DNA from: Guillardia theta CCMP2712
Taxonomy: Eukaryota; Protista; Cryptophyta
Length of the DNA stretch: 64,000 bases
Direction: 5' to 3'
Assembly: GCF_000315625.1 (NCBI RefSeq)
Contig: NW_005434617.1
Location: 89,734 to 153,733, forward strand
Shown here: piece by piece, positions 4,601 through 55,829 of the stretch
Layout: every line of letters begins with the position of its first letter
How positions within the stretch are numbered: position 1 is the first letter of the stretch
Position numbers and translations under genes: made by a program
The notes under the pieces: generated by a model
What the model was told of the DNA's origin: nothing
The model's database searches: none
What the model saw: only the letters and a program-made list of their open reading frames with translations

Positions 4601-6697
4601 GGAAGGAGGGGAGGGCTGAATGTGGACAGTGGGAGGATGAAGTTTCAAGGTCGAGCTGACAGTCTGCCGGGCAGTCTCATCGCTTACTACGATTCGACTC
4701 ACAAGAAGCCGAGGGGTCAGGAGGACTCGATGGCAGGGCAGACGACGAGCCTGGCGCAGAACTTCCCCCAGAAGCAGAAGAGGAGGATGAGTAAGGGGCA
4801 GGTGCGGGCGCTCGCGTGCGACTACCTATCGTCCTCTCCGTCTCGTGGCCATGTCGAGGAGCTTCAACGTCTCTTCCTGCGCAAGTTCGGGGAAGGCTTG
4901 AAGTGCACTGGGGAGGAGCGAGGGAGAGCACATCAGCAGGTGAAGCAGGTAAGCTTGTGAGGACGATGACGATGGTGGTGGTGATGAGGTGCAGAACTTG
5001 GCGATGAAGCCTGAAGAAGAGGCGAAGAAAGATCAGGAGGAAGAGAAGCTTGAGGAGGAGCAGAAGGAGGAGGAGCAGAAGGAGGAGGAGCAGAAGGAGG
5101 AGGAGCAAAAAGAGGAGGAGGAGGAGGAGGAGGAGGAGGAGAGGACAGTTTACCTCTACGTCGGGCGGGACGCGCGAGCAGCCTTCCAGTACAAGGTCGT
5201 CAGTCATGCTGGCATCTGTGAGATGACTAAGAGGTCAACAGGTCGAAGACATCCTCTCAAAACNNNNNNNNNNNNNNNNNNNNNNNNNNNNNNNNNNNNN
5301 NNNNNNNNNNNNNNNNNNNNNNNNNNNNNNNNNNNNNNNNNNNNNNNNNNNNNNNNNNNNNNNCCAACCTGCAACTCCTTCTCCACCACCACCACGTCCT
5401 CCTCCTCCTCCTCCTCCTCCTCCTCCTCCTCCTCCTCCTCCTCCTCCTGCTCCTGCTCCTGCTCCTTCTGCTCTTCGTCTTGTCTTCCGACTTCTTATGT
5501 ATTTTCAGAGCATCAACAAGGAGGCAATCAGAGCTGTTGTGTGGGCCAAGGATTGTTCTGTCCTGATGTTTCCTCCATTCTTCAGCTTCCCGGACTTTCA
5601 TGAATATGTAAGAAAAGTAGGAGGAAGAGGAGGCGGGGGTAGGGAGTGGGGAAGCAGGTGGGGGGGCAGACGAGGGAAGCAGAGGAGGAGGGAGGATGAA
5701 GAGACTGAAACGCCTGCTGTGCAGGCTAAGAGGGATATTCGCAACTTTGTGAGGAAAGGAGGAAAGCATCACGGGACGGTCCTCTTCGTGGGAGGAGGTT
5801 TAGAAGTCTCCGTCATCAATCACATCTTCGGCTTCGAGGTCAAACCCTCCCTCTCCTTCTCCTCCCTCATCCCCCCTCTCCCTTCCTCTTGCTCCTCCTT
5901 CCCCGTCCCTTCTCCTCGCTTTGCCTCCTCTTCTCTTCCCCTTCCCCCATCATCCACTCCTTGATCTTGCTCCCCTCCCTCTTCCCCTCCACGAGTGCTC
6001 ATCTCGCTGCAGATTCATCCCAAGTACGTGGCTGGCCCCTACTACAAGAACAAGCGCTACGTGAAGGAGGGCGAGAGCTTCTCGGAGCTGCCTGACCTTG
6101 TGCCTGAGGTGAGACGAGGGGATGAAGACGAGGGTTGAGAAAAGGAGATGTAGACGATGGAGGAGGGAGGAGAGGAGAGGAGAGGAGAGGAGAGGAGAAG
6201 AATTTTTGACAGTTTGATCAGGTGGGGAATGTTTATGGGATGTGGATGCCATCGCTGCCTCCAAACTCTAGGTCCTTCTCTCCTCCCTTGTCCTTCTCTC
6301 CTGCTCCTTCCCTTTCTCCGCCATACGCCCTCCTCCCTCTTCCCCCCCCCCTCCTGACTTCCTTTCCCACAGGTCATTCTACGACTCCTTCGGTGTTAGC
6401 GTCGCCTGCTGCATACGATATGACCTCGGAAGAATCTGCTTCCTGGCACAGGTGTAACTTATCCACTTTCCTCTCCTCCTCCCTTCCACCCTTCCCCACT
6501 ATCTCCTCCCCCTTCTCCATTGCCCCTCGTCTCCCCCCGATCCTATCCTCCCGCTCCTCTCCTCCCGCTCCTCTCCTCCTGCTCCTCTCCCCCCTCCTTG
6601 TCCTCTCCTCACTCTCCTGCAGGACTTCTTGGATGTTCTCAAGGACGAGGTTGGTCCCTGGGCTGCTCTGTTAGCGGCGATTCTCGACTACTCGTGA
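1619..6697 (+). CDS. Large multi-exon orphan protein, probable N-terminal membrane anchor, acidic/coiled-coil middle (start uncertain; spans gap 5264-5363)
   Basis: ORF pieces 1960-2331, 2365-3645, 3811-, 4314-4420, 4630- and 5510-6110 are joined by GT-AG introns, e.g. GCC GG|gtagat...gacag|T GGG AGG ATG in frame. The last exon reads DFLDVLKDEVGPWAALLAAILDYS* and stops at 6697. Hydrophobic LPILATSMCVLLAVYHV lies near the 5' end. No family recognised. Confidence 0.5.
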
Positions 6698-6961
6698 GGG
6701 GGTGTAAATACGATGAGTGTAGACTAGGAGCGGGGGGAGACTGCAGGCCGTGAGGGTTCAAGTCTGAAGAGAGCGAACGTAAGTAGCGCTGGAGATAGGG
6801 GGAAAGAGGAGGAGGAAGGGGAAAGAGGAGGAGGAGGGGGAAAGAGGAGGAGTAATCGAGACGGGCTATTCATCTTTTGTAAATATTTCACCGAAAATTG
6901 TGTCGAGAGTGGAGGAAGGGAGGAGGAGGAGGAGGAGGAGGAGGGGGAGGAGGGGGGAGGG

Positions 6962-7598
6962 CTAGCAGCATGAGGTGTTATTGTTGAAGGAGTGGCTTCG
7001 CTTCGGCTTGGACCCTACCTTCTCTGGGTTGGGGGTGCCGAACATGCCCTGGTGGACCCACTTGGGGGTCATCATGACCTCTCCCTTGGCCAGCACGGAC
7101 TTGAGCTTGAGAGTGTTCTTGTCGAGGAGGAGAACGTCGGCGTCAGAGCCCACGCTGATCTCTCCCTTTCCCTTGAGCTTCAGGAACTTGGCCGGGTTCT
7201 TGGTTACGAGCGGGAGGATCCGATCGAGGGGCCACTGCTCCTGGAAGTACATCTTCCAAATGAACTGCAGGAAGGCCTTGGGGTGGCCGTAGGTGTAGCG
7301 GACGAGGTTGCCGTCGTCGTCGAAGGACGGGAGGGAGCCGTAGGAGTCGGAGGAGACCATCACGTGGTCCATGGGCAGCCCCTCCTGGTGGTACTTGCGG
7401 AGGGCGAGACGAGCCTTGACGGTGCGGCAGGTGAAGTCGACGTAGCCTCCCTTGCGGATCCACCTTGCTCCGTCCTGCGGGGTGATTGAGTGACAGGAGA
7501 GGGAGGGAGGCGGGAGGAAAGACTGAGGAGAAGGTTGGGGAAGAGAGATCAAGACAGGAATGAGGAGGAGAGGGGAGGGGCAAGAATGGTAGTGATAA

Positions 7599-7635
<37 letters not shown>

Positions 7636-10600
7636 GGCAGGGGCAGGGGCAGGGGCAGGGGCAGGGGCAGGGGCAGGGGCAGGGGCAGGAGCAGGGGCAG
7701 GGGCAGGGGCAGGGAAAGGAGGCGCAGGATAAGGGGAGGGGCCCCTAACCTCGATTAGGGCTTCCGATCGCTCCATGTGGGTGGGCAGGAAGGTCGTAAT
7801 GGGTATATCGCTCTCCTTCATCGCCTTCCACAGCGGCTGCAGCAGCCCATCCCCGAACCCCATGTGGCAGTACATGACTCCGGCCTTCCCGCTCAGCAGC
7901 CCTCCCACCCGACAGTCGGACGCAACGTCGAGGATGCGCTCAGAGGAGGGCTGGGAGCCCCTGTGGTCGGAGATGGCACACTCCCCGACCCCGATGCACT
8001 GCTCCAGCAGGCAGATGTCTCGTCGTACGGAGCCAGTGATGTTGGGCGCGGGGATGCGATAGGCTCCTGTCCACATGTATGCGGTGATGCCGTCCTCGTT
8101 GAGGCCCCGGCACTTGGTCAAGAGGTTCTCAAGGCTCCTGCTAACGCAGTCCGTTCCCAGCACGCCGACGACCGTCGTCAGACCTGCCGGGGGTCTCAGG
8201 GGCAGGAGAGAAGGAAGGGGGCGAGGGGGGTGGAGGGGGCGAGAAGGGAAGGGTGAGGGACATATCAGCCATCCAGTTGAAGGAGAAGCAGATTGAAACG
8301 AATGCAGCTGCAGAAGCCAAGANNNNNNNNNNNNNNNNNNNNNNNNNNNNNNNNNNNNNNNNNNNNNNNNNNNNNNNNNNNNNNNNNNNNNNNNNNNNNN
8401 NNNNNNNNNNNNNNNNNNNNNNGACAACCTGCAAGCTTCTGTCAGGAAGGCGGGGGAAGAGAAGGTAAAGTTGAAGCGATGGCGCTGGTATGTTGATCAT
8501 GATGGGGAGAGGAGGGAGGAGGAGGAGGAGGAGGAGGAGGAGGAGGAGGAGGAGGAGGAGGAGGATAGGTCACCTGCGTACCACCGACTAGAATGTGTTT
8601 GGCGTTGATGACCTCGGGAGCAAAGATCGCCTCGGCGTTCTTGATAAGGGTGAGCTTGAAGCGGGACTGCATCTGCTGAGAGACGACGGGGAGAGGAGGG
8701 ACCGAAGGCTTCAGCAGGTTGTTCGCCTTGTCATGCAGCGCCATGCATGCGTGCTCGTCTCTTCCTATCGCTATGAACATCCCAGCCACTCCTCGCAGAA
8801 ACTGGATGGGAAAGACTCCGCTGCTGCTCTGACCCGGCACGAAGTTACATCCTGCATTCTTGAGGCGCTTCCAGAAGGTCTGGATGTCAAGATCCTCTGC
8901 AAGAGCAAAGTCAAGATCAGAACACCTTTCGTCTTCCTCCTCTTGCCGCAGCCCCCGTTCTCCTCTCCTTTCTACCTCTCTGTTCTCCCTCCTCCCCGTT
9001 CCCCCTCCAATCCCTCTCCCCCTCGCTCCCCCTCCTCCTCTCTCCTGCACCTCTTCTCCCCCTTGCCTCACTTCCTCCCCCCTGAGGCACGCAGCTCACC
9101 TGTCGGCCTGTGCTCCCAGCAGTAGTAGGTCTTGTCGTGTGCGTACATCTGCAGGAAGAGCTTCGGGAAGTGACCTGAACGGAACCGCCCCGCCTTGAGG
9201 CTGCAGAGGACGGGGTTCCCTCCCACAGAGACGAAGTCCATCCCCCCCGGCCCCTTAGGCTTCATCTTGGACACGATGGACTGAAAGTAGCGGTTGGCCG
9301 ACTTCTGAAAGATCTTGGACGCGATCGACTTCCTCCAGCCCATGCACGAGTAGCCGACGATGATCTGGTCCACGAGCCCCTTCCCCAGCAGCACCCCTTC
9401 GTTGTAGTGCAGGGCGGGAGAGAGGATCAGCCCATCGGGCGCCTTGTCGAGGTTGAGAAACTCCTCGACGCAGACCTCACCGAGAGGGAAGTCATACATC
9501 TTCAGCTGCTCCATCTCGCTCACCACCAGGATCCCGTCCCCGTCGGTCCCGTAGATGGGCTTGATGATGATGTCTTTCACGTCCAGCAGCCTGTACGCCT
9601 CCAGCAGGTCATCCACGGTGGAGCAGCGGTACCCTCGAGCAACAGGGATGCTCGGGTCAAGCTGCTCGATTGCGGAGGGGGTGTTTGGAGACGAGACATG
9701 GCGGTGCAGGACGCCCTTGGAGCCGAACTTTTCAGTGAACTCGAGCTCCTCCCCGAAGACAGCGACGCCGAACTCGCTCAGGCTGCTGGCCCATCGCTGG
9801 AATGTGGGAGTGACCATGTAGGGGACGAGCGTCCACTTGTCCTCGCCGGAGATGATGATGCCTTTGAGCTGCGAGAGGATGGAGTCGTCGATGTCGTCGT
9901 CGAGCGACAGGTTCTCTCCTGAAGTGAAGATCGCTTGCGACTTGTCCAAATTCATCGCATTCCTGCAGAACTCCCAGTACTCCTTGATCGGCTTGTATCC
10001 TCCCGGCAAGATAATGATGTCTAAGTGCGGCCTCACGCATGCGATGGCCTTAGCGGCGAGCTGGAAGCGACGGTGAGGCTTTCGAACCTCGCTGAGAGGG
10101 CAGGACTGCACCCAGATCCTCCTCCTGTACCGCGACAGGGAAACAGACTCGACGTTTTGGTTGACACAGACCTCCCGGCTGGCAGTCTCCGCCTGCTCCT
10201 TGAGGGCCATGGCTTCTGAGTCGTCGCTCGCGATGGAGATGTAAGTTCCGATGCCGTAGTTGCTCTGGTTCCTGAGGAAGAGAAGGGGAAAGACTCCTGA
10301 CTTGGACTTCCCGGGAATGAACGCGATCCCCCGCTCCACCAGGCGGCTCCAGAAGGTCCAGATGTCGAGGTCAGAGGGTGGGTGTGAGTTCCACATATAG
10401 AACACAGAGCCCGTCGCATGCGTTTCCAGGAAGAGCTTGGCGTAGTGCATTGACGTGAAGACGTTGGTCTCCATCTCCAACAGGATCGGCTCGCCGTCGA
10501 TGCTCCCGAAGTCGAACAGCCCGGGCCCTTCAGGCTTCATCTCCTTGAGGATCGCGTTGGCCGCCAACGTGATCTGATCCTGGAATTTGAGGCTCGTGAC

Positions 10601-13600
10601 TGACTTGCGGATACACTGCTTGCGGTTCCCGAGGCTGACTACGTCCGTGAAGCCCTGCCCGAAGATCTCTCCCTTCATGTACGCCACCGAAGTCGTGATC
10701 GGAAGGCCGTCCGGCGCCTTGTCCAGCTGCACATTCTCCCGCAGCACCACAGTGCCGTCTGCAAAGTCGTACAGCCTCACCTCCTCGATGCTGCGCACAA
10801 TCTTGCTGGCCCGCCCATCGACGGAGTCTACGGGCCGGATGACGGCAGTCTCTCCGTCATGCAGCCCGAGCTCCTCGAAGGCTGAGACCAGCTCCTCGGA
10901 GTTCTCGCACACGAACCCCCGGATCACTCTGCACTTCTTGCCCAGCAGGGACTCCACCAGCGATGGCGAGGTTGGGGACGAGATCGAACGGAAGATCGCC
11001 TTCTTGTCTCCAAACTTGCTGATCCATTCCGGATGCTCCCCAAACACCTTTAGGTTGCTGTTGTCGATGTTGTTTGCCCATCGCTGGAAGTTGTCGGTCA
11101 CGGTCATGGGAACAAGGATGAATTGCTGGTCCGACTGGTTGCTCACGGTGTTCTTGATCCGATCGATCACGCCCTGATCAATCTCGTCGTCCAAGCACAG
11201 ACTCGACGGATTTCCCGCAGTCCAGATGACCTGCCCGTCTTCGAGCTTGAGAATTTCCTTGCAGAACTCAAAGTAGTCATGAGCCCCCTCGTGATCGCCC
11301 TGGAGGACAATGAGGTCTAGTCCCGGACGCAGCAGGCAAGTAGGGCGGAGCGAGCACTCGTAGCGAGTCTGCGGCCGTCGGATCTCAGGGATGGAGCTGG
11401 TGACCCAGATACGACGGGCTGCCTTGCGCATTATGTCAGCCTTCTTGAAGAAGGATGGCTTCGGGACGATGAGGTCGATCGGAATCCTCGCATTCTTGTC
11501 GAACTTGGAGATGAGGGCGTCTCCCTGCTTGTACAAGGCCTCCGCTTCTTCGTTTGTGTCCCCAAAGGCAACGTACAGGCCTGAAAGACCTCGGAGGAAC
11601 AGGAGAGGGAAGATGCCCCTCGTGGACTTGCCGGGAATGAAAGCGATGCCGTTGGAGACCAACCTGCTCCAGAAGGCGTACACGTCAAAGTCAAGGGCCG
11701 GTGCTGTCTTCCAGCAGTAGAACGAGCTGTCAGGCGCATAGCGAGCCTGAAACAGCTTCGGGAAATGAGCGCCATTGAATCGCCCTGTGTTGATGTCGGA
11801 AAGGACGGGAAGGCCGTTGACTGAAAGGAAATCGACGCCTCCTGGTCCCCTCGGCTTGGTCGCCTGGATGACGTTTTGCATGTATCGATTGGCTGTCTTC
11901 TGGAAGACCTTGGTTGCCCCTGACTTTCTCCATCCCATGTAGCTTGTTCCCACCATGATCTGATCCACTAACCCCTTGCCGATGAGTACCCCCTCGTTGT
12001 AGTGCATGGCGGGGGACAAGACAAGACCGTCCGGCGCCTTGTCAAGGTCGAGGAACTCCTCCAAGCAAACATCGCCCATGGGAAAGTCGTACATCTTGAG
12101 CTGCTCGAGCTCGCTGCAAAAGATGATTCCTTCTCCAGCCGCCCCGAACACCGGCTTGATCACAACCTCCTTGCAGTCCAGCAGCTTGTAGGCCTCCACC
12201 AAGTCGTCCACTGTGGAGCAGCCGTATCCTCGTGCAACCCGGATGTTGGGGTCGATCTCCTCGATGATGGAAGGAGTGTCAAGGCTGCGTACATGGCGGT
12301 GCAAGATGCCCTTCGATCCAAACTTCTGCACCCACTCCAGGTCCTCCCCGAAGACGGAAACATCGAGATCAGCAAGCTGACATGCCCACCGCTGGAAGTT
12401 GGACGTAACCATGTAGGGGACAAGGGTCCACGAGTTCCCCGACGACTGTATGATGCTTCTCAGCCTTGACAGGATCGTCTCGTTGATGTCGTCATCCAGA
12501 CAGTAGGAATCTCCGGACGAGAAGATAACCTGGTCTTCTCCGAGGTCCAACACATCCTTCATGAAACTCCAGAACTCCCTGGTGGGCTCGTGTCCTCCAG
12601 GCAAGACGATGACATCCACACCTGGTCGCAGCAATCCGATGCACCTGTTGGGAAGGTTGTACCTCTGGGTCACGAGCTTGTACTCTGGCCTGGGACTTTG
12701 GATCCAAAGCTGCCGGCGATTCTCACTGAGAGCAACAGACTCAATCTTGTTGCTGAGGTCTACCAGACGCATAACATGCTCGGCCTGCGATCGCAGGAGA
12801 GAGACATCTGCGTCATCGACTCCGATGCTGATCAGAGTTGCTGTTGTGTTCTTCAAGAATAGGAGCGGGAATACCCCACGCTTTGACTTGCCCGGCATGA
12901 AAGCAATGTTGCGATCACACAGTCTTGTCCACAATCTGCAAGCAGAGAGGATTAGGAAGAAACAACTTTCATTGCTTGCATTACGTCCAAACGTCCATTC
13001 CCGGATGCGGATAGAAGTTCCACGAGCAGAACCGAGCGTCCTTCGCGTACATCTCATGGAACAACTTGGTGAAGTGCTCCATGCACAGGGTGCCGGCATG
13101 AGCATCTGTCAAGTACGGCTTGCCATCGACTGAGGTGAAGGCAAAAGCTCCCATCCCCGACGGCGCAATCGCTTCCACGAGTCGGCTTGAATGTTGTCTG
13201 CACACCAGGTCAATTGGATCAACGCCCACACAAAGTTGCATGCTTTACGATATCTTGTCCATAAACTCTTGTGTTGCAGTGCAAGAGCGTAAGCCATAAG
13301 TCATTGAACCCATGATAATCCGTTCGCAGGGACGCCCGTCCAACAGGTCGTTCTGCATGTACTGTACTGTTGGGCTGACGTGCATCCCGTCTGGCGACCT
13401 GTCCACTTGTAGATATTCTTGGAGAATGACATCACCGTATGGGAAGTCATAAAACCTACACAAAAAACTATCGTCACCCTCTCTGCTACCAATATCAAGA
13501 TGATCCTTTCCTCAGCTCCTCGGCACTGGATGGGGACAGCATTCCTTGGCCACTGCTCAGGATAGGCTTGATCACAACTTGCACGTTTGGATCTCCGTCA

Positions 13601-14440
13601 GTCAACAGTCGAAATGCAACCTTTAGGAGTGTTAGGTCACAGCCTCGTCAAGAAGGCAAGCTCACAAGCAACTGCTTGTCATCGGAACAAGTGAAGCCCC
13701 TCGGGACGGTGATGTCTAGCCCCAGTTCTTCGATGATCGATAGTTTGTCGAGGTCAGAAACCTGATCCAACGCAATGACTTGCATGAAACAGAAGAGATC
13801 AACTTAGAGACAACTCACGTGTCGGTGTATCACTCCCCGATTTCCAAATCTTGACATCCATTCTTTGCTCTCTCCGACGATTTTGATGTTTTTCGTCCCC
13901 AGCTGTCTCTTCAGGACCACCTCCAGGTCTCTCAATCTGGACGTTATAGAGAATGGAATGAGCAGCCATTCCTCATCTTGGCTCTTGGAGGCAAAGGAGA
14001 GGACTCTGTCCTTCACGCTGTCTGTAAAATTTCCAAGGGACTCGTTGAACGATCGCTGCTGATCGTCAGTGTATACAATCTGCTCGTCCTTGAGCGTCAG
14101 CACTTCCTTACAGAACTGATTCCAGCATCAAATGCTGCCACAAGACCAAACAGCAACATGTACCTCTGCAAACTCCCGTGTGCTCTCGTGTCCTCCAGGG
14201 ATGACAGCGATGTCCTTGTTGCTCCTTAGCAGCGGGATACACCTGAGCGATGTTGTGAGCAACTCTCTTGACATCGTCTCTGCATTCTTGGATCAATGAT
14301 ATCTACCTTGCTGGGAGCTCATCGAACTCTGCCTCAAAATGCTCTTGGTTCGACACGAGGCACCAAATGCGGAAGACATCTTGGTTGCTCCTGGCGGCTT
14401 TCCTCCCCCGTGTTGGTGTCGTAGGCGTTTGTCCCACCAT
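6962..14440 (-). CDS. Giant fusion protein: four tandem pre-ATP-grasp/ATP-grasp modules plus C-terminal isoaspartyl dipeptidase (IadA-type amidohydrolase)
   Basis: Four ~430-aa repeats begin R(I/L)W...(L/V)R(P/S)xxD(V/I/L)xx(L/I)xGxH/Y at about 14375, 12718, 11420 and 10126. Each carries KFG(S/D)K or RFGNR, RG(F/Y)xC, I(K/R)P, YDF, DKAPDG or DRSPDG, and G(V/I)FP motifs. Exon 8896-8574 joins the end of repeat 4 to FKLTLIKNAEAIFAPE. Downstream exons read GLTTVVGVLGTD, TGAY, AISDHR, RVGGLLSGKAG..HMG, LPTHMER, SSDSYGSLP and KGEISVGSDAD, all matching E. coli IadA motifs. The start could lie one exon further upstream. Confidence 0.88.
7600..7715 (+). repeat. (GCAGGA/GCAGGG)n intronic hexamer repeat
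   Basis: Direct inspection. It lies inside an intron of the IadA domain. Confidence 0.9.
8323..8422. other. Assembly gap (100 N) inside the IadA domain
   Basis: N run. Other gaps lie at 5264-5363, 22236-22890 and 55542-55725. Confidence 0.99.
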
Positions 14441-19603: not shown

Positions 19604-23420
<3,817 letters not shown>

Positions 23421-55430: not shown

Positions 55431-55829
55431 CGAGTTCAACTCAGTCCTCAGCATCTTGGCTCTTCCCTCCATCCTCCCCTCCCCCTTCCCTTCCACACCC
55501 TTTCCGCCTTCCCCCCCCCCCCCCCTCCCCCACAAAATTTCNNNNNNNNNNNNNNNNNNNNNNNNNNNNNNNNNNNNNNNNNNNNNNNNNNNNNNNNNNN
55601 NNNNNNNNNNNNNNNNNNNNNNNNNNNNNNNNNNNNNNNNNNNNNNNNNNNNNNNNNNNNNNNNNNNNNNNNNNNNNNNNNNNNNNNNNNNNNNNNNNNN
55701 NNNNNNNNNNNNNNNNNNNNNNNNNNGAGGAGAAGAGGAGGAGAAGGAGGAGAGGAGGAGAGGAGGAGAGGAGGAGAGGAGGAGAGGAGAAGAGGAGGAG
55801 AGGAGAAGAGGAGGAGAAGGAGGAGAGGG

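What the first reader, a model, noticed from the sequence alone, without database searches (positions are those of the whole stretch)
6962..14440. Four tandem ATP-grasp ligase modules fused to an isoaspartyl dipeptidase: candidate synthetase/hydrolase for beta-aspartyl peptides
Seen: four homologous ~430-aa modules (~14375-12760, 12718-11500, 11420-10170, 10126-8715) are followed by an IadA domain. The fusion needs no assumed splice. Inside one exon (8896-8574), the tail of module 4 (GVFPIQFLRG...HDKANNLL) reads straight into the IadA N-terminus (FKLTLIKNAEAIFAPE, compare E. coli FTLLQGAHLYAPE). Known: ATP-grasp enzymes form amide bonds, including in cyanophycin synthetase, D-aspartate ligase and PGM1-type peptide ligases. 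IadA hydrolyses beta-Asp dipeptides such as the cyanophycin product beta-Asp-Arg. Glutathionylspermidine and trypanothione synthetase/amidases are precedents for an ATP-grasp ligase fused to the opposing hydrolase. Inference: one polypeptide makes and breaks an isoaspartyl peptide or polymer, possibly a nitrogen store or osmolyte in a eukaryotic alga. I know of no described protein with this architecture.
Basis: partly seen in the sequence, partly recalled or inferred. Interest (0 to 1): 0.93.

Follow-up and report, generated by a model that had tools for sequence, protein, structure and literature searches.

The report
ATP-grasp ligase repeats fused to isoaspartyl dipeptidase
A Guillardia theta gene encodes one ~2147-residue protein with four ATP-grasp ligase-like repeats, only one still looking catalytic, fused to an isoaspartyl dipeptidase; the same uncharacterised fusion occurs in choanoflagellates, Mantamonas and green algae, which hints at an unknown beta-aspartyl-peptide metabolism in protists.

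Summary
On the minus strand, 14440-6962 is one 12-exon gene of Guillardia theta. It has four homologous ~430-aa PreATP-grasp/ATP-grasp modules, a ~17-aa linker and a type I (Glu-bridged) isoaspartyl dipeptidase (IadA).

The fusion needs no assumed splice: exon 8896-8574 is open from the module 4 tail into the IadA N-terminus. Spliced contigs from two runs cover IadA and modules 4-2 as one piece.

The N gap hides an IadA exon. The contigs carry 199 unplaced letters there. After boundary correction this is 202 nt, which keeps the frame and gives exactly the 69 residues that orthologues have at this spot.

Module 2 alone keeps the full ATP-grasp Lys / Glu-Glu / Asp / Asp-x-Asn / Arg set. Modules 1, 3 and 4 are conserved but degenerate. 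Another first-stage note of this scan on the same stretch says the same, and I tested it here.

The module fold is closest to Streptomyces PGM1/BesA-type peptide ligases. The fusion also occurs in heterotrophs, and the genome lacks cyanophycin genes, so an algal nitrogen-store polymer is unlikely.

The public model GUITHDRAFT_74499 omits two modules. I found no paper on the fusion. The function (making and breaking a beta-aspartyl dipeptide) remains inference.

The parts
14307..14440 (-). Exon 1: ATG at 14440, N-terminus and first strand of module 1 ('RIWCL...')
   Evidence: The nearest in-frame ATG is at 14440. The peptide matches the N-termini of orthologues P0205 and P0002 ('RVWCLA...EFDQLPAR'). 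The public model starts later and lacks this strand.
14164..14242 (-). Exon 2 (module 1), after a 64-nt GT..AG intron at 14306-14243
   Evidence: The junction 'LPAR|CIPLL' aligns without gaps to P0205 and P0002.
13819..14115 (-). Exon 3 (module 1), after a 48-nt GT..AG intron at 14163-14116
   Evidence: The junction 'REFAE|FCKEVL' agrees with the public model and with modules 3 and 4.
13666..13761 (-). Exon 4 (module 1), after a 57-nt GTGAGT..CAG intron at 13818-13762
   Evidence: Best-scoring junction against P0205.
13511..13620 (-). Exon 5 (module 1, holds the 'VVIKP' strand), after a 45-nt intron at 13665-13621
13249..13455 (-). Exon 6 (module 1), after a 55-nt intron at 13510-13456 with non-canonical GA..AG ends
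   Evidence: No GT..AG solution keeps the frame. Orthologue P0205 reads 'SAEELRFYDFPYGDV', which only this junction reproduces. Needs cDNA confirmation.
12985..13197 (-). Exon 7 (module 1, degenerate Mg-site region), after a 51-nt intron at 13248-13198
9100..12935 (-). Exon 8 (3.8 kb): tail of module 1, all of module 2 (12718-11420) and module 3 (11419-10127), and most of module 4 (10126-9100)
   Evidence: 1345-aa ORF, module map, covered without a break by spliced contigs. Module 2 hits PF18604 at 1.5e-10 and ATP-grasp_3. Its model has pLDDT 92.7 and its best fold matches are 8YND, BesA and PGM1.
8574..8896 (-). Exon 9, the fusion exon: tail of module 4 (to ~8712), a ~17-aa linker, and the IadA N-terminus from ~8660
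   Evidence: Intron 9099-8897 (203 nt, GT..AG) is seen as a joint in X3 and X4. There is no stop across the junction.
8323..8428 (-). Exon 10 starts at 8428, after a 145-nt intron at 8573-8429, and runs into the N gap (8323-8422). About 202 nt in all, with only 6 nt visible.
   Evidence: 199 unplaced letters in both RNA contigs, and a 215-letter loose end of X2 at 8423. The length equals the orthologues' 69-residue segment, which holds H-x-H and GGGGE. This exon is not found elsewhere in the assembly.
7749..8183 (-). Exon 11: IadA catalytic core (Thr, Tyr, Glu bridge, Arg, His, His, Arg)
   Evidence: TIGR01975 positions 89-234. Gapless alignment to 5XGX, 7CDH and 8DQN. Residue roles are taken from PMC5517026.
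6962..7473 (-). Exon 12: IadA C-terminal part (Asp metal ligand, beta-sandwich) with the stop codon at 6964-6962, after a 275-nt intron at 7748-7474 that holds a hexamer microsatellite
   Evidence: TIGR01975 positions 235-388, joint seen in X3 and X4, alignment to 1ONW and 7CDH.

Best explanation
Shown: 14440-6962 (minus strand) is one expressed gene of Guillardia theta. It encodes a ~2147-aa protein made of four tandem PreATP-grasp/ATP-grasp modules of the PGM1/BesA structural type, followed by a type I isoaspartyl dipeptidase (IadA) domain.

Inferred from sequence: only module 2 is a working ATP-dependent carboxylate-amine ligase. Modules 1 and 3 are pseudo-enzyme copies. Module 4 keeps the ATP-side residues but not the Mg ligands. 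These degenerate copies would serve as scaffold or regulatory partners, effectively a covalent pseudo-oligomer of a ligase that is otherwise a single module.

The IadA domain keeps the metal and substrate-binding residues of solved enzymes. It should therefore hydrolyse free beta-Asp-X dipeptides.

Most likely mode of action (inference, not shown): the one active ligase site and the hydrolase site work on the same small-molecule pool. Module 2 would activate a carboxylate as an acyl-phosphate and make an omega-linked (beta-aspartyl) dipeptide. The IadA domain would split it again, so the protein sets the level of that dipeptide rather than building a polymer.
For: One gene, one transcript:
- The fusion exon is open across the junction.
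- Spliced contigs of two runs span IadA, the gap exon and modules 4 to 2, then continue 1194 nt further. The spliced module 1 model needs 1172 nt, which fits.
- The whole model is 6444 nt with no stop.
- The fusion is conserved in P0002 (2137 aa), P0205 (2157 aa), Pedinophyceae P0012 (2295 aa), five choanoflagellates (~1260 aa, two modules + IadA) and Mantamonas.

Ligase type:
- PF18604 at 1.5e-10.
- Model pLDDT 92.7, pTM 0.89.
- Foldseek best hits are 8YND, BesA 8YI6 and PGM1 3WVQ at TM ~0.69, against ~0.55 for PurK/PurD/biotin carboxylase.
- Atlas neighbours are PreATP-grasp, PGM1_C and BtrJ families.

One active module:
- In module 2 numbering, K188, E220/E221, D296, D308, N310 and R313 are all kept only in M2, in the second module of two-module proteins, and in single-module relatives.
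- M1 has Q220, A296, H310 and T313. M3 has R188, R220, E310 and V313. M4 has S308 and K310.
- M2 (71/68/56%) and IadA (71/64/58%) are the best conserved parts against three orthologues. M1 and M3 reach 34-51%.
- The M1s and M3s form their own long-branched orthologous clades.

IadA: positions equal to CpsIadA Thr109, Glu166, Arg173, His205, His234 and Arg237 are kept, as is the Asp in the last exon. Their roles are given in PMC5517026.

Omega-carboxylate chemistry has precedent in this structural group. From my own knowledge, BesA makes gamma-Glu-propargylglycine and BtrJ makes gamma-glutamyl thioesters and amides. The BesE preprint names the gamma-glutamyl dipeptide.
Against: - No substrate evidence of any kind exists. 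Nothing shows that module 2 uses aspartate or makes a beta-linkage.
- A ligase and the opposing hydrolase on one chain is a futile cycle unless regulated, and no regulatory element was identified.
- The closest prokaryotic relatives (CPR bacteria) have no IadA in their genomes and no conserved neighbours. Single-module eukaryotic relatives occur alone or fused to RING fingers. So the ligase chemistry is not intrinsically tied to IadA and may act on peptides or proteins.
- The H-x-H metal site and the Glu that binds the substrate amino group lie in the unread gap exon.
- Loss of signature residues suggests inactivity but does not prove it. M3 keeps acidic residues at both Mg positions.
- One module 1 intron needs non-canonical GA..AG ends.
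Confidence: 0.4

Rival explanations
1. Same-direction pathway or salvage. The IadA domain frees Asp and a partner amino acid from beta-aspartyl dipeptides that arise from damaged-protein turnover. Module 2 then uses one of the products at once, ligating it to another acceptor such as a peptide or protein N-terminus, as PGM1 does. The two sites would be coupled in series, not opposed.
For: - PGM1-type fold. From my own knowledge, PGM1 ligates an acid to peptide N-termini.
- Canonical single-module relatives are fused to RING fingers in Picozoa and in environmental eukaryotes. This hints at protein-directed chemistry in the family.
- The ligase exists without IadA in CPR bacteria and as a stand-alone paralogue in G. 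theta.
- IadA enzymes are promiscuous housekeeping dipeptidases (PMC10206079).
Against: - No acceptor peptide or protein is known.
- Free amino acids diffuse, so fusion brings little gain unless there is channelling.
- The strict conservation of the [degenerate-canonical]-IadA order over several supergroups suggests a tighter functional tie than general salvage.
Confidence: 0.25
2. First reader's reading in full. All four modules are active ligases that act in turn, or iteratively, to build a beta-aspartyl oligopeptide or cyanophycin-like polymer used as a nitrogen store or osmolyte. IadA recycles it.
For: - Four homologous modules in tandem.
- Weak local similarity of the 'VVIKP' region to the cyanophycin synthetase G domain (TIGR02068 7.9e-6; PDB 7LG5 0.0048 with the module profile).
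Against: - M1, M3 and M4 lack two to four of the ATP/Mg signature residues, and consistently so in orthologues.
- Many species manage with two modules, only one of them canonical.
- TIGR02068 scores 24 bits against a cut-off of 850. No Mur-ligase-like domain was detected.
- No cyanophycin synthetase or cyanophycinase was found in the assembly.
- IadA acts on dipeptides, and the residues that bind the dipeptide's free carboxylates are kept.
- Heterotrophic choanoflagellates and Mantamonas carry the fusion.
Confidence: 0.08
3. Clean-up (metabolite repair) domain. Module 2 makes an alpha-linked Asp-containing product and occasionally activates the wrong carboxylate. The fused IadA removes the beta-linked by-products.
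For: IadA specificity residues for beta-Asp dipeptides are kept. Otherwise this rests only on the general precedent of repair enzymes being fused to the enzymes that cause the damage (my own knowledge).
Against: - No evidence that the ligase uses Asp at all.
- The IadA domain is as conserved as the ligase module, which suggests a main role rather than an accessory one.
- Stand-alone ligase relatives lack any IadA partner.
Confidence: 0.1
4. Artefact. Two neighbouring genes (a multi-module ATP-grasp gene and an iadA gene) are wrongly read as one, or the gap hides a stop or frameshift so that IadA is not made as part of the same protein.
For: The gap exon cannot be read in this assembly. RNA contigs are assemblies, not single molecules (caveat).
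Against: - The module 4 tail and the IadA N-terminus lie in one exon with no stop and no start codon needed.
- Two runs give the same spliced contig.
- The hidden length fits the frame and the orthologues to the residue.
- The same fusion is present in transcript-derived proteins of distant eukaryotes.
Confidence: 0.02

Closest known systems
PGM1 (pheganomycin peptide ligase, PDB 3WVQ/3WVR), BesA (8YI6) and the Streptomyces ATP-grasp peptide ligase 8YND: PreATP-grasp-type carboxylate-amine ligases
   Same: Same domain plan within each module: an N-terminal pre-ATP-grasp domain (PF18604) plus an ATP-grasp body. They are the best structural matches (TM 0.65-0.69, E to 1e-17). Module 2 keeps the ATP-grasp Lys, Glu-Glu, Asp and Asp-x-Asn-x-x-Arg residues.
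   Different: - Only 13-17% sequence identity, with no sequence-level PDB hit.
- The PGM1_C domain (PF18105) was not detected.
- The known enzymes are single-module bacterial secondary-metabolism proteins. Here there are four tandem copies, three of them degenerate, in a eukaryote and fused to a hydrolase.
- Substrates are unknown.
Isoaspartyl dipeptidase IadA, type I (CpsIadA 5XGW/5XGX; also 7CDH and 8DQN), peptidase family M38, TIGR01975
   Same: The window's exons align without gaps over ~300 residues (E 1e-44 and 1e-18). They keep the Glu metal bridge that defines type I, two His and one Asp ligand, and the Thr and two Arg that hold the dipeptide. Orthologue P0002 matches over the full length at 1e-84.
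   Different: Known IadAs are free-standing ~390-aa prokaryotic octamers. This one is the C-terminal domain of a 2147-aa eukaryotic protein. Its H-x-H exon is unread in this assembly.
Glutathionylspermidine synthetase/amidase and trypanothione synthetase/amidase (a ligase fused to the opposing hydrolase)
   Same: The logic is the same: an ATP-dependent amide-forming domain and an amide-splitting domain on one chain.
   Different: Not homologous. No GSP_synth or CHAP domain was detected. The hydrolase here is a binuclear-metal amidohydrolase and lies at the C-terminus. Opposing action on one compound is not shown here.
Cyanophycin synthetase CphA1 with cyanophycinase and IadA (the cyanophycin cycle)
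   Same: An ATP-grasp step and an IadA step belong to one pathway in bacteria (PMC10206079). There is weak local similarity around the ATP-binding strand.
   Different: - TIGR02068 scores 24 bits against a cut-off of 850.
- There is no Mur-ligase-like M domain and no N domain.
- No cphA or cyanophycinase was found in the genome.
- The module fold is PGM1-like, not close to the CphA G domain.

Membership tests
PreATP-grasp / PGM1-like ATP-grasp ligases | N-terminal pre-ATP-grasp domain (Pfam PF18604) | tested here: met
   Module 2 scores 41.9 bits against a cut-off of 27.5, E 1.5e-10. PF18604 is also recorded for orthologues P0001-P0004 and P0012. The Pfam model does not detect it in M1, M3 or M4, but these are homologous to M2 over their full length.
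PreATP-grasp / PGM1-like ATP-grasp ligases | ATP-grasp three-domain fold closest to PGM1-type structures | tested here: met
   AlphaFold2 model of module 2 has pLDDT 92.7 and pTM 0.89. The top Foldseek hits are 8YND, BesA 8YI6 and PGM1 3WVQ/3WVR at TM ~0.69.
PreATP-grasp / PGM1-like ATP-grasp ligases | ATP/Mg signature residues: Lys before the Gly-rich loop, Glu-Glu hinge, Asp, Asp/Glu-x-Asn, Arg | tested here: met
   Met for module 2 only (K188, E220/E221, D296, D308, N310, R313). Not met for M1 (Q220, A296, H310, T313), M3 (R188, R220, E310, V313) or M4 (S308, K310). Assigning these columns to ATP and Mg binding rests on established ATP-grasp knowledge, not on a ligand-bound model.
PreATP-grasp / PGM1-like ATP-grasp ligases | PGM1 C-terminal domain (PF18105) | tested here: not met
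   No PF18105 hit at E <= 0.1 in the 1345-aa ORF or the other exons. I therefore do not file the modules as PGM1 family members in the narrow sense, only as the same structural type.
PreATP-grasp / PGM1-like ATP-grasp ligases | ATP-dependent carboxylate-amine ligation | not testable with these tools
   Needs an enzyme assay.
Isoaspartyl dipeptidase IadA (TIGR01975, M38) | Full-length match to the family model | tested here: inconclusive
   Two exons match profile positions 89-234 (189 bits) and 235-388 (102 bits), and the N-terminus lies in exon 9. No single piece reaches the 331-bit cut-off, because the gene is split and about 67 residues are unread. Orthologue P0002 matches solved IadAs end to end at 1e-84.
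Isoaspartyl dipeptidase IadA (TIGR01975, M38) | Binuclear metal site: H-x-H, bridging Glu (type I) or carbamyl-Lys (type II), two His, Asp | tested here: inconclusive
   The Glu bridge, both His and the Asp are present. The H-x-H lies in the gap exon. It is present in orthologues at the matching place ('HVHITGGGGE').
Isoaspartyl dipeptidase IadA (TIGR01975, M38) | Residues that hold a free beta-Asp dipeptide (CpsIadA Glu80, Thr109, Arg173, Arg237) | tested here: met
   Thr, Arg and Arg are kept by direct position mapping to 5XGX (roles from PMC5517026). The Glu80 equivalent is in the gap exon and is present in orthologues.
Cyanophycin synthetase (CphA1, TIGR02068) | Family-level match with N, G (ATP-grasp) and M (Mur-ligase-like) domains | tested here: not met
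   24.1 bits against a cut-off of 850, confined to ~45 residues around the ATP-binding strand. No Mur-ligase domain in Pfam. No cphA or cyanophycinase in the assembly.
Glutathionylspermidine synthetase/amidase | GSP_synth and CHAP amidase domains | tested here: not met
   Neither domain appears in the Pfam scans. This is an analogy of logic only.

The most novel reading that the evidence does not exclude
An ancient bifunctional enzyme, spread over several eukaryotic supergroups (Cryptista, Archaeplastida, choanoflagellates, CRuMs), makes and destroys a so far undiscovered beta-aspartyl (omega-linked) dipeptide that acts as a regulated metabolite, buffer or signal in protists. One live ATP-grasp site is embedded in a covalent array of pseudo-enzyme copies that gate it.
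Probability: 0.3. Interest if true: 0.8.

Novelty: new variant of a known kind. Interest (0 to 1): 0.6.

Why it matters
Both halves belong to known enzyme kinds. I found no description of the combination: tandem PGM1/BesA-type ATP-grasp modules, mostly degenerate, fused to IadA. Yet it is conserved from cryptophytes and green algae to choanoflagellates and Mantamonas.

That pattern points to a piece of small-peptide metabolism in eukaryotes that nobody has looked at. It gives a concrete, cloneable candidate with clear point mutants to test.

It is also a clean natural example of pseudo-enzyme repeats kept next to one live copy.

On the practical side, the public G. theta model (GUITHDRAFT_74499, 1221 aa) lacks two modules, the first exon and the gap exon. 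UniRef names it 'dihydropyrimidinase', so it misleads anyone who searches by architecture.

Tried and rejected
- Plain sequence search of module 2 against PDB gave only chance-level hits to succinyl-CoA synthetase beta. The 37-sequence module profile gave only weak local hits to cyanophycin synthase (0.0048). The fold search was needed to place the module.
A 7-sequence alignment worked and found only six CPR loci.
- Gene neighbourhood of prokaryotic relatives: no conserved neighbour and no IadA-like ORF. No IadA anywhere in those five genomes.
- Cyanophycin link: no cphA or cyanophycinase in the genome.
- I hoped the public model P0009 would show the gap exon. It does not. It reads through the intron after the gap and skips M3 and M4.
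- The gap exon is not on any other contig of the assembly.
It was replaced by junction-by-junction enumeration.
I redid it from coordinates only.
- The joined coding model (with X at the 68 unread or split codons) was built only inside scripts from window coordinates, for frame checks and local comparisons. It was not sent to any database, fold or family search. So no search or fold of the full joined protein was made.
- No structure was predicted for M1, M3, M4 or for the ligase-IadA arrangement. The tool reports no inter-domain confidence, so it could not have settled the geometry.
- No complex prediction was run.

Full report
WHAT IS THERE

The window is contig C57:89734-153733 of an 87-Mb, 669-contig assembly. 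Its proteins are 95% identical to Guillardia theta CCMP2712 entries and 94% to Hanusia phi, so this is the cryptophyte G. theta.

On the minus strand a 1345-aa ORF (9068-13105) is flanked by smaller coding pieces. tblastn with one module finds four tandem homologous copies:
- M1, 14244-12743, in three frames
- M2, 12718-11420
- M3, 11416-10184
- M4, 10126-9101 plus 8906-8712

Pfam finds the Pre-ATP-grasp domain PF18604 (1.5e-10) and ATP-grasp_3 in M2. NCBIfam finds isoaspartyl dipeptidase TIGR01975 at profile positions 89-234 and 235-388 in the two downstream ORFs.

THE GAP AND THE FUSION

This was tested first, as the scan's program asked.

The intron at 9099-8897 is phase 1. Removing it restores the motif that the other modules have at that place. 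The joined reading frame runs 1443 codons without a stop, from M1's tail through M2, M3, M4 and a ~17-residue linker into the IadA N-terminus.

Laying contigs of four runs on 6900-12899 gave, in two runs under two organism labels (X3 and X4), one spliced contig that covers:
- 6966-7473
- 7749-8185
- 199 letters that lie on nothing in the window
- 8573-8896
- 9100-12899, and in X3 a further 1194 nt upstream

The skipped stretches have GT..AG ends on the gene's strand, so these contigs come from spliced RNA.

Two letters at 8185-8184 and one at 8573 match by chance across the true splice sites (acceptor cag|G at 8184/8183, donor CAG|gtgacc at 8574/8573). After that correction the unread exon is 202 nt, or 67 codons plus one base. 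That is exactly what a phase-0 donor and a phase-1 acceptor require.

Orthologues P0002, P0004 and P0007 have 69 residues between 'GGTQ' and 'TTVVG'. Here the count is 67 + 1 split codon + Leu = 69.

A contig of run X2 runs 215 letters into the gap from 8423. Its contigs retain the introns, so X2 is probably DNA. The 30 letters given, read by hand after the six visible exon letters 8428-8423, translate to VVGLLDDQAAAA. Orthologues have IVGLLDD.A..A there.

Three things follow. The two sides of the gap are continuous and in frame in the mRNA. The gap is longer than the 100 N written. And it hides the IadA exon that carries H-x-H and GGGGE in orthologues. That exon's letters could not be read, and it is not elsewhere in the assembly.

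GENE MODEL

Module 1 is cut by seven very short introns of 45-64 nt. I placed them by frame, GT..AG ends and gapless fit to orthologues P0205 and P0002.

The first exon starts at the ATG at 14440. It encodes the module's first strand, which P0205 and P0002 also have and which the public model lacks.

One intron (13510-13456) has GA..AG ends. No canonical alternative keeps the frame. Only this junction reproduces the orthologues' '...AEELRFYDF...'.

The whole model is 6444 nt with no stop, giving 2147 aa, 68 of them unread. Orthologues are 2157 aa (P0205) and 2137 aa (P0002). The spliced module 1 part upstream of 12899 is 1172 nt, against 1194 nt in the RNA contig. This leaves about 22 nt of 5' UTR.

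The joined model was kept inside scripts and was not sent to any search or fold tool. All such searches used single exons or references.

The public model GUITHDRAFT_74499 (P0009, 1221 aa) is wrong in three ways. It starts inside intron 1. It jumps from M2 into the tail of M4, losing two modules. And it translates the intron after the gap.

WHAT THE MODULES ARE

An AlphaFold2 model of M2, built on a 37-sequence alignment, is confident (pLDDT 92.7, pTM 0.89). Only the last 25 residues, the inter-module linker, are disordered.

Foldseek ranks three structures first at TM ~0.69: a Streptomyces ATP-grasp peptide ligase (8YND), BesA (8YI6) and PGM1 (3WVQ/3WVR). PurK, PurD and biotin carboxylase follow at ~0.55. 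Language-model neighbours in the ESM Atlas are PreATP-grasp, PGM1_C and BtrJ families. Sequence identity to these is only 13-17%, and the PGM1_C domain is not detected. So the modules are of the PGM1/BesA structural type but form a separate family.

That family is small. An exhaustive profile search found 595 cluster representatives at E <= 0.001.

ONLY ONE MODULE LOOKS ALIVE

I extracted the ATP-grasp signature columns for 37 modules. In M2 numbering these are K188 in 'VVIKP', E220/E221, D296, D308-x-N310 and R313. All are kept in:
- M2 of four-module proteins
- the second module of two-module proteins
- every single-module relative

The other modules have lost some:
- M1 has Q220, A296, H310 and T313.
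- M3 has R188, R220, E310 and V313.
- M4 keeps K188, E220/E221, D296 and R313 but has S308 and K310.

Orthologues show the same kind of losses at the same module positions.

A maximum-likelihood tree groups M1 with M1 and M3 with M3 across Guillardia, P0002 and the pedinophyte, on long branches. M4 groups weakly with the canonical M2 cluster. All canonical modules form one short-branched cluster.

Against three full-length orthologues, M2 (71/68/56%) and IadA (71/64/58%) are the most conserved parts. M1 and M3 reach only 34-51%.

This agrees with an earlier first-stage note of this scan on the same stretch (s1-453505). I treated that note as a lead and tested it here. The degenerate copies are retained over deep divergences, so they presumably have a structural or regulatory role.

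THE IadA DOMAIN

The window's two visible IadA exons align without gaps to solved enzymes. By direct position mapping to CpsIadA (5XGX), several residues are kept:
- the Glu metal bridge (Glu166, the mark of type I IadA)
- His205 and His234
- the dipeptide-binding Thr109, Arg173 and Arg237

The Asp ligand is in the last exon. The residue roles are those given in PMC5517026. The H-x-H and the Glu that binds the substrate amino group are in the unread exon and are present in orthologues.

The domain therefore looks like an active hydrolase for free beta-Asp-X dipeptides. It does not look suited to polymers or proteins.

DISTRIBUTION AND CONTEXT

Fused forms:
- Four modules + IadA: Guillardia, P0002, MMETSP transcript P0205, and Pedinophyceae sp. 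YPF-701. Hanusia's entry (P0001, 1275 aa) is partial and covers modules only.
- Two modules + IadA, with only the second canonical: the choanoflagellates Microstomoeca roanoka, Salpingoeca infusionum, Choanoeca flexa, S. urceolata and Hartaetosiga gracilis.
- Several modules + IadA: Mantamonas plastica.

Single canonical modules occur alone, including a G. theta paralogue on C135, GUITHDRAFT_146829. Some are fused to a C-terminal RING finger, in Picozoa and in environmental eukaryotes.

The only prokaryotic relatives found are ~410-aa proteins of CPR bacteria (Liptonbacteria, Saccharibacteria, Parcubacteria). They have no conserved neighbours, no IadA-like ORF nearby and no IadA in their genomes.

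G. theta has no cyanophycin synthetase or cyanophycinase at family thresholds. It has two further IadA-like loci, not joined to modules of this family.

Three literature searches found no paper on an ATP-grasp-IadA fusion. The cyanophycin/IadA bioinformatics paper does not mention eukaryotes, fusions or ATP-grasp.

HOW IT MOST LIKELY WORKS

Shown: one expressed protein, and the domain identities.

Inferred from sequence: one live ligase site (M2), one live dipeptidase site, and three pseudo-enzyme modules.

Inferred by analogy: M2 activates a carboxylate as an acyl-phosphate and joins it to an amine. Since the permanently attached hydrolase is specific for beta-aspartyl dipeptides, the simplest link is that M2 makes such an omega-linked dipeptide and IadA removes it. 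The protein would then set the level of that compound. Relatives of this structural type that activate a side-chain carboxylate (BesA, BtrJ; my own knowledge) make this chemically reasonable. I give this 0.4.

The main rival (0.25) is coupling in series. IadA would supply an amino acid that M2 ligates onto another acceptor, possibly a peptide or protein. This is suggested by PGM1's chemistry and by the RING-fused relatives.

The other rivals score lower:
- Four-step assembly line or polymer: 0.08. It is disfavoured by the degenerate modules, the two-module forms, the dipeptide-type IadA, the missing cyanophycin genes and the heterotrophic carriers.
- Clean-up role for IadA: 0.1.
- Mis-joined genes: 0.02.

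VERDICT

It is overstated on three points: four active ligases, uniqueness, and an algal nitrogen store.

This is a new variant built from known enzyme kinds. It is conserved across eukaryotic supergroups and directly testable. Interest 0.6.

Noticed in passing
window 6962-14440 (public protein P0009 = GUITHDRAFT_74499): The public G. theta gene model (1221 aa, named 'dihydropyrimidinase' by UniRef) starts inside intron 1, skips modules 3 and 4, drops 9 residues at the 13510-13456 junction, and translates intron sequence after the assembly gap.
   Followed up: yes
window 13456-13510: A 55-nt intron whose ends read GA..AG on the gene strand. Only this junction keeps the frame and matches orthologues. 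It is either a true non-canonical intron or a base error at the donor.
   Followed up: partly
window 12936-14306 compared with 7474-9099: The seven introns of module 1 are only 45-64 nt long. The three visible 3' introns are 145-275 nt, and two of them carry microsatellites: a hexamer repeat at ~7590-7724 and a CCT repeat at ~8503-8572, which read laying skipped as repeats.
   Followed up: no
G000:C135:130933-132299 (L009, L011, L016); X3 record 10: A single-module paralogue (GUITHDRAFT_146829, 585 aa, 55% identical to module 2, with a ~120-aa N-terminal extension) lies on another contig. A diverged 2050-nt RNA contig that touches the window at three short places may be its transcript.
   Followed up: partly
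G000:C6:837560-838228 and G000:C21:137169-138517 (L003-L005): Two further IadA-like loci in the same genome (48% and 33-41% identical to the P0002 IadA domain), not associated with modules of this family.
   Followed up: no
L024-L029 (CPR bacterial genomes); tree: The only prokaryotic relatives found are in Liptonbacteria, Saccharibacteria and Parcubacteria. In a midpoint-rooted tree they sit inside the cluster of canonical eukaryotic modules. That would fit transfer between eukaryotes and CPR bacteria, but the direction is unknown because the root is not established.
   Followed up: partly
P0041, P0042, P0045, P0080: Canonical single modules are fused to a C-terminal RING finger (PF13639, PF13920, PF00097) in Picozoa sp. 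COSAG02 and in environmental eukaryotes. This is a second fusion partner, and it hints at protein-directed chemistry.
   Followed up: partly
run X9: A run labelled freshwater metagenome holds 53% of the sampled words of this stretch. I did not lay it and did not check the organism's habitat.
   Followed up: no
window 5264-5363, 22236-22890, 55542-55726: Three more assembly gaps in the window. The gap studied here is under-sized by at least ~115 nt, so the other written lengths may be unreliable too.
   Followed up: no
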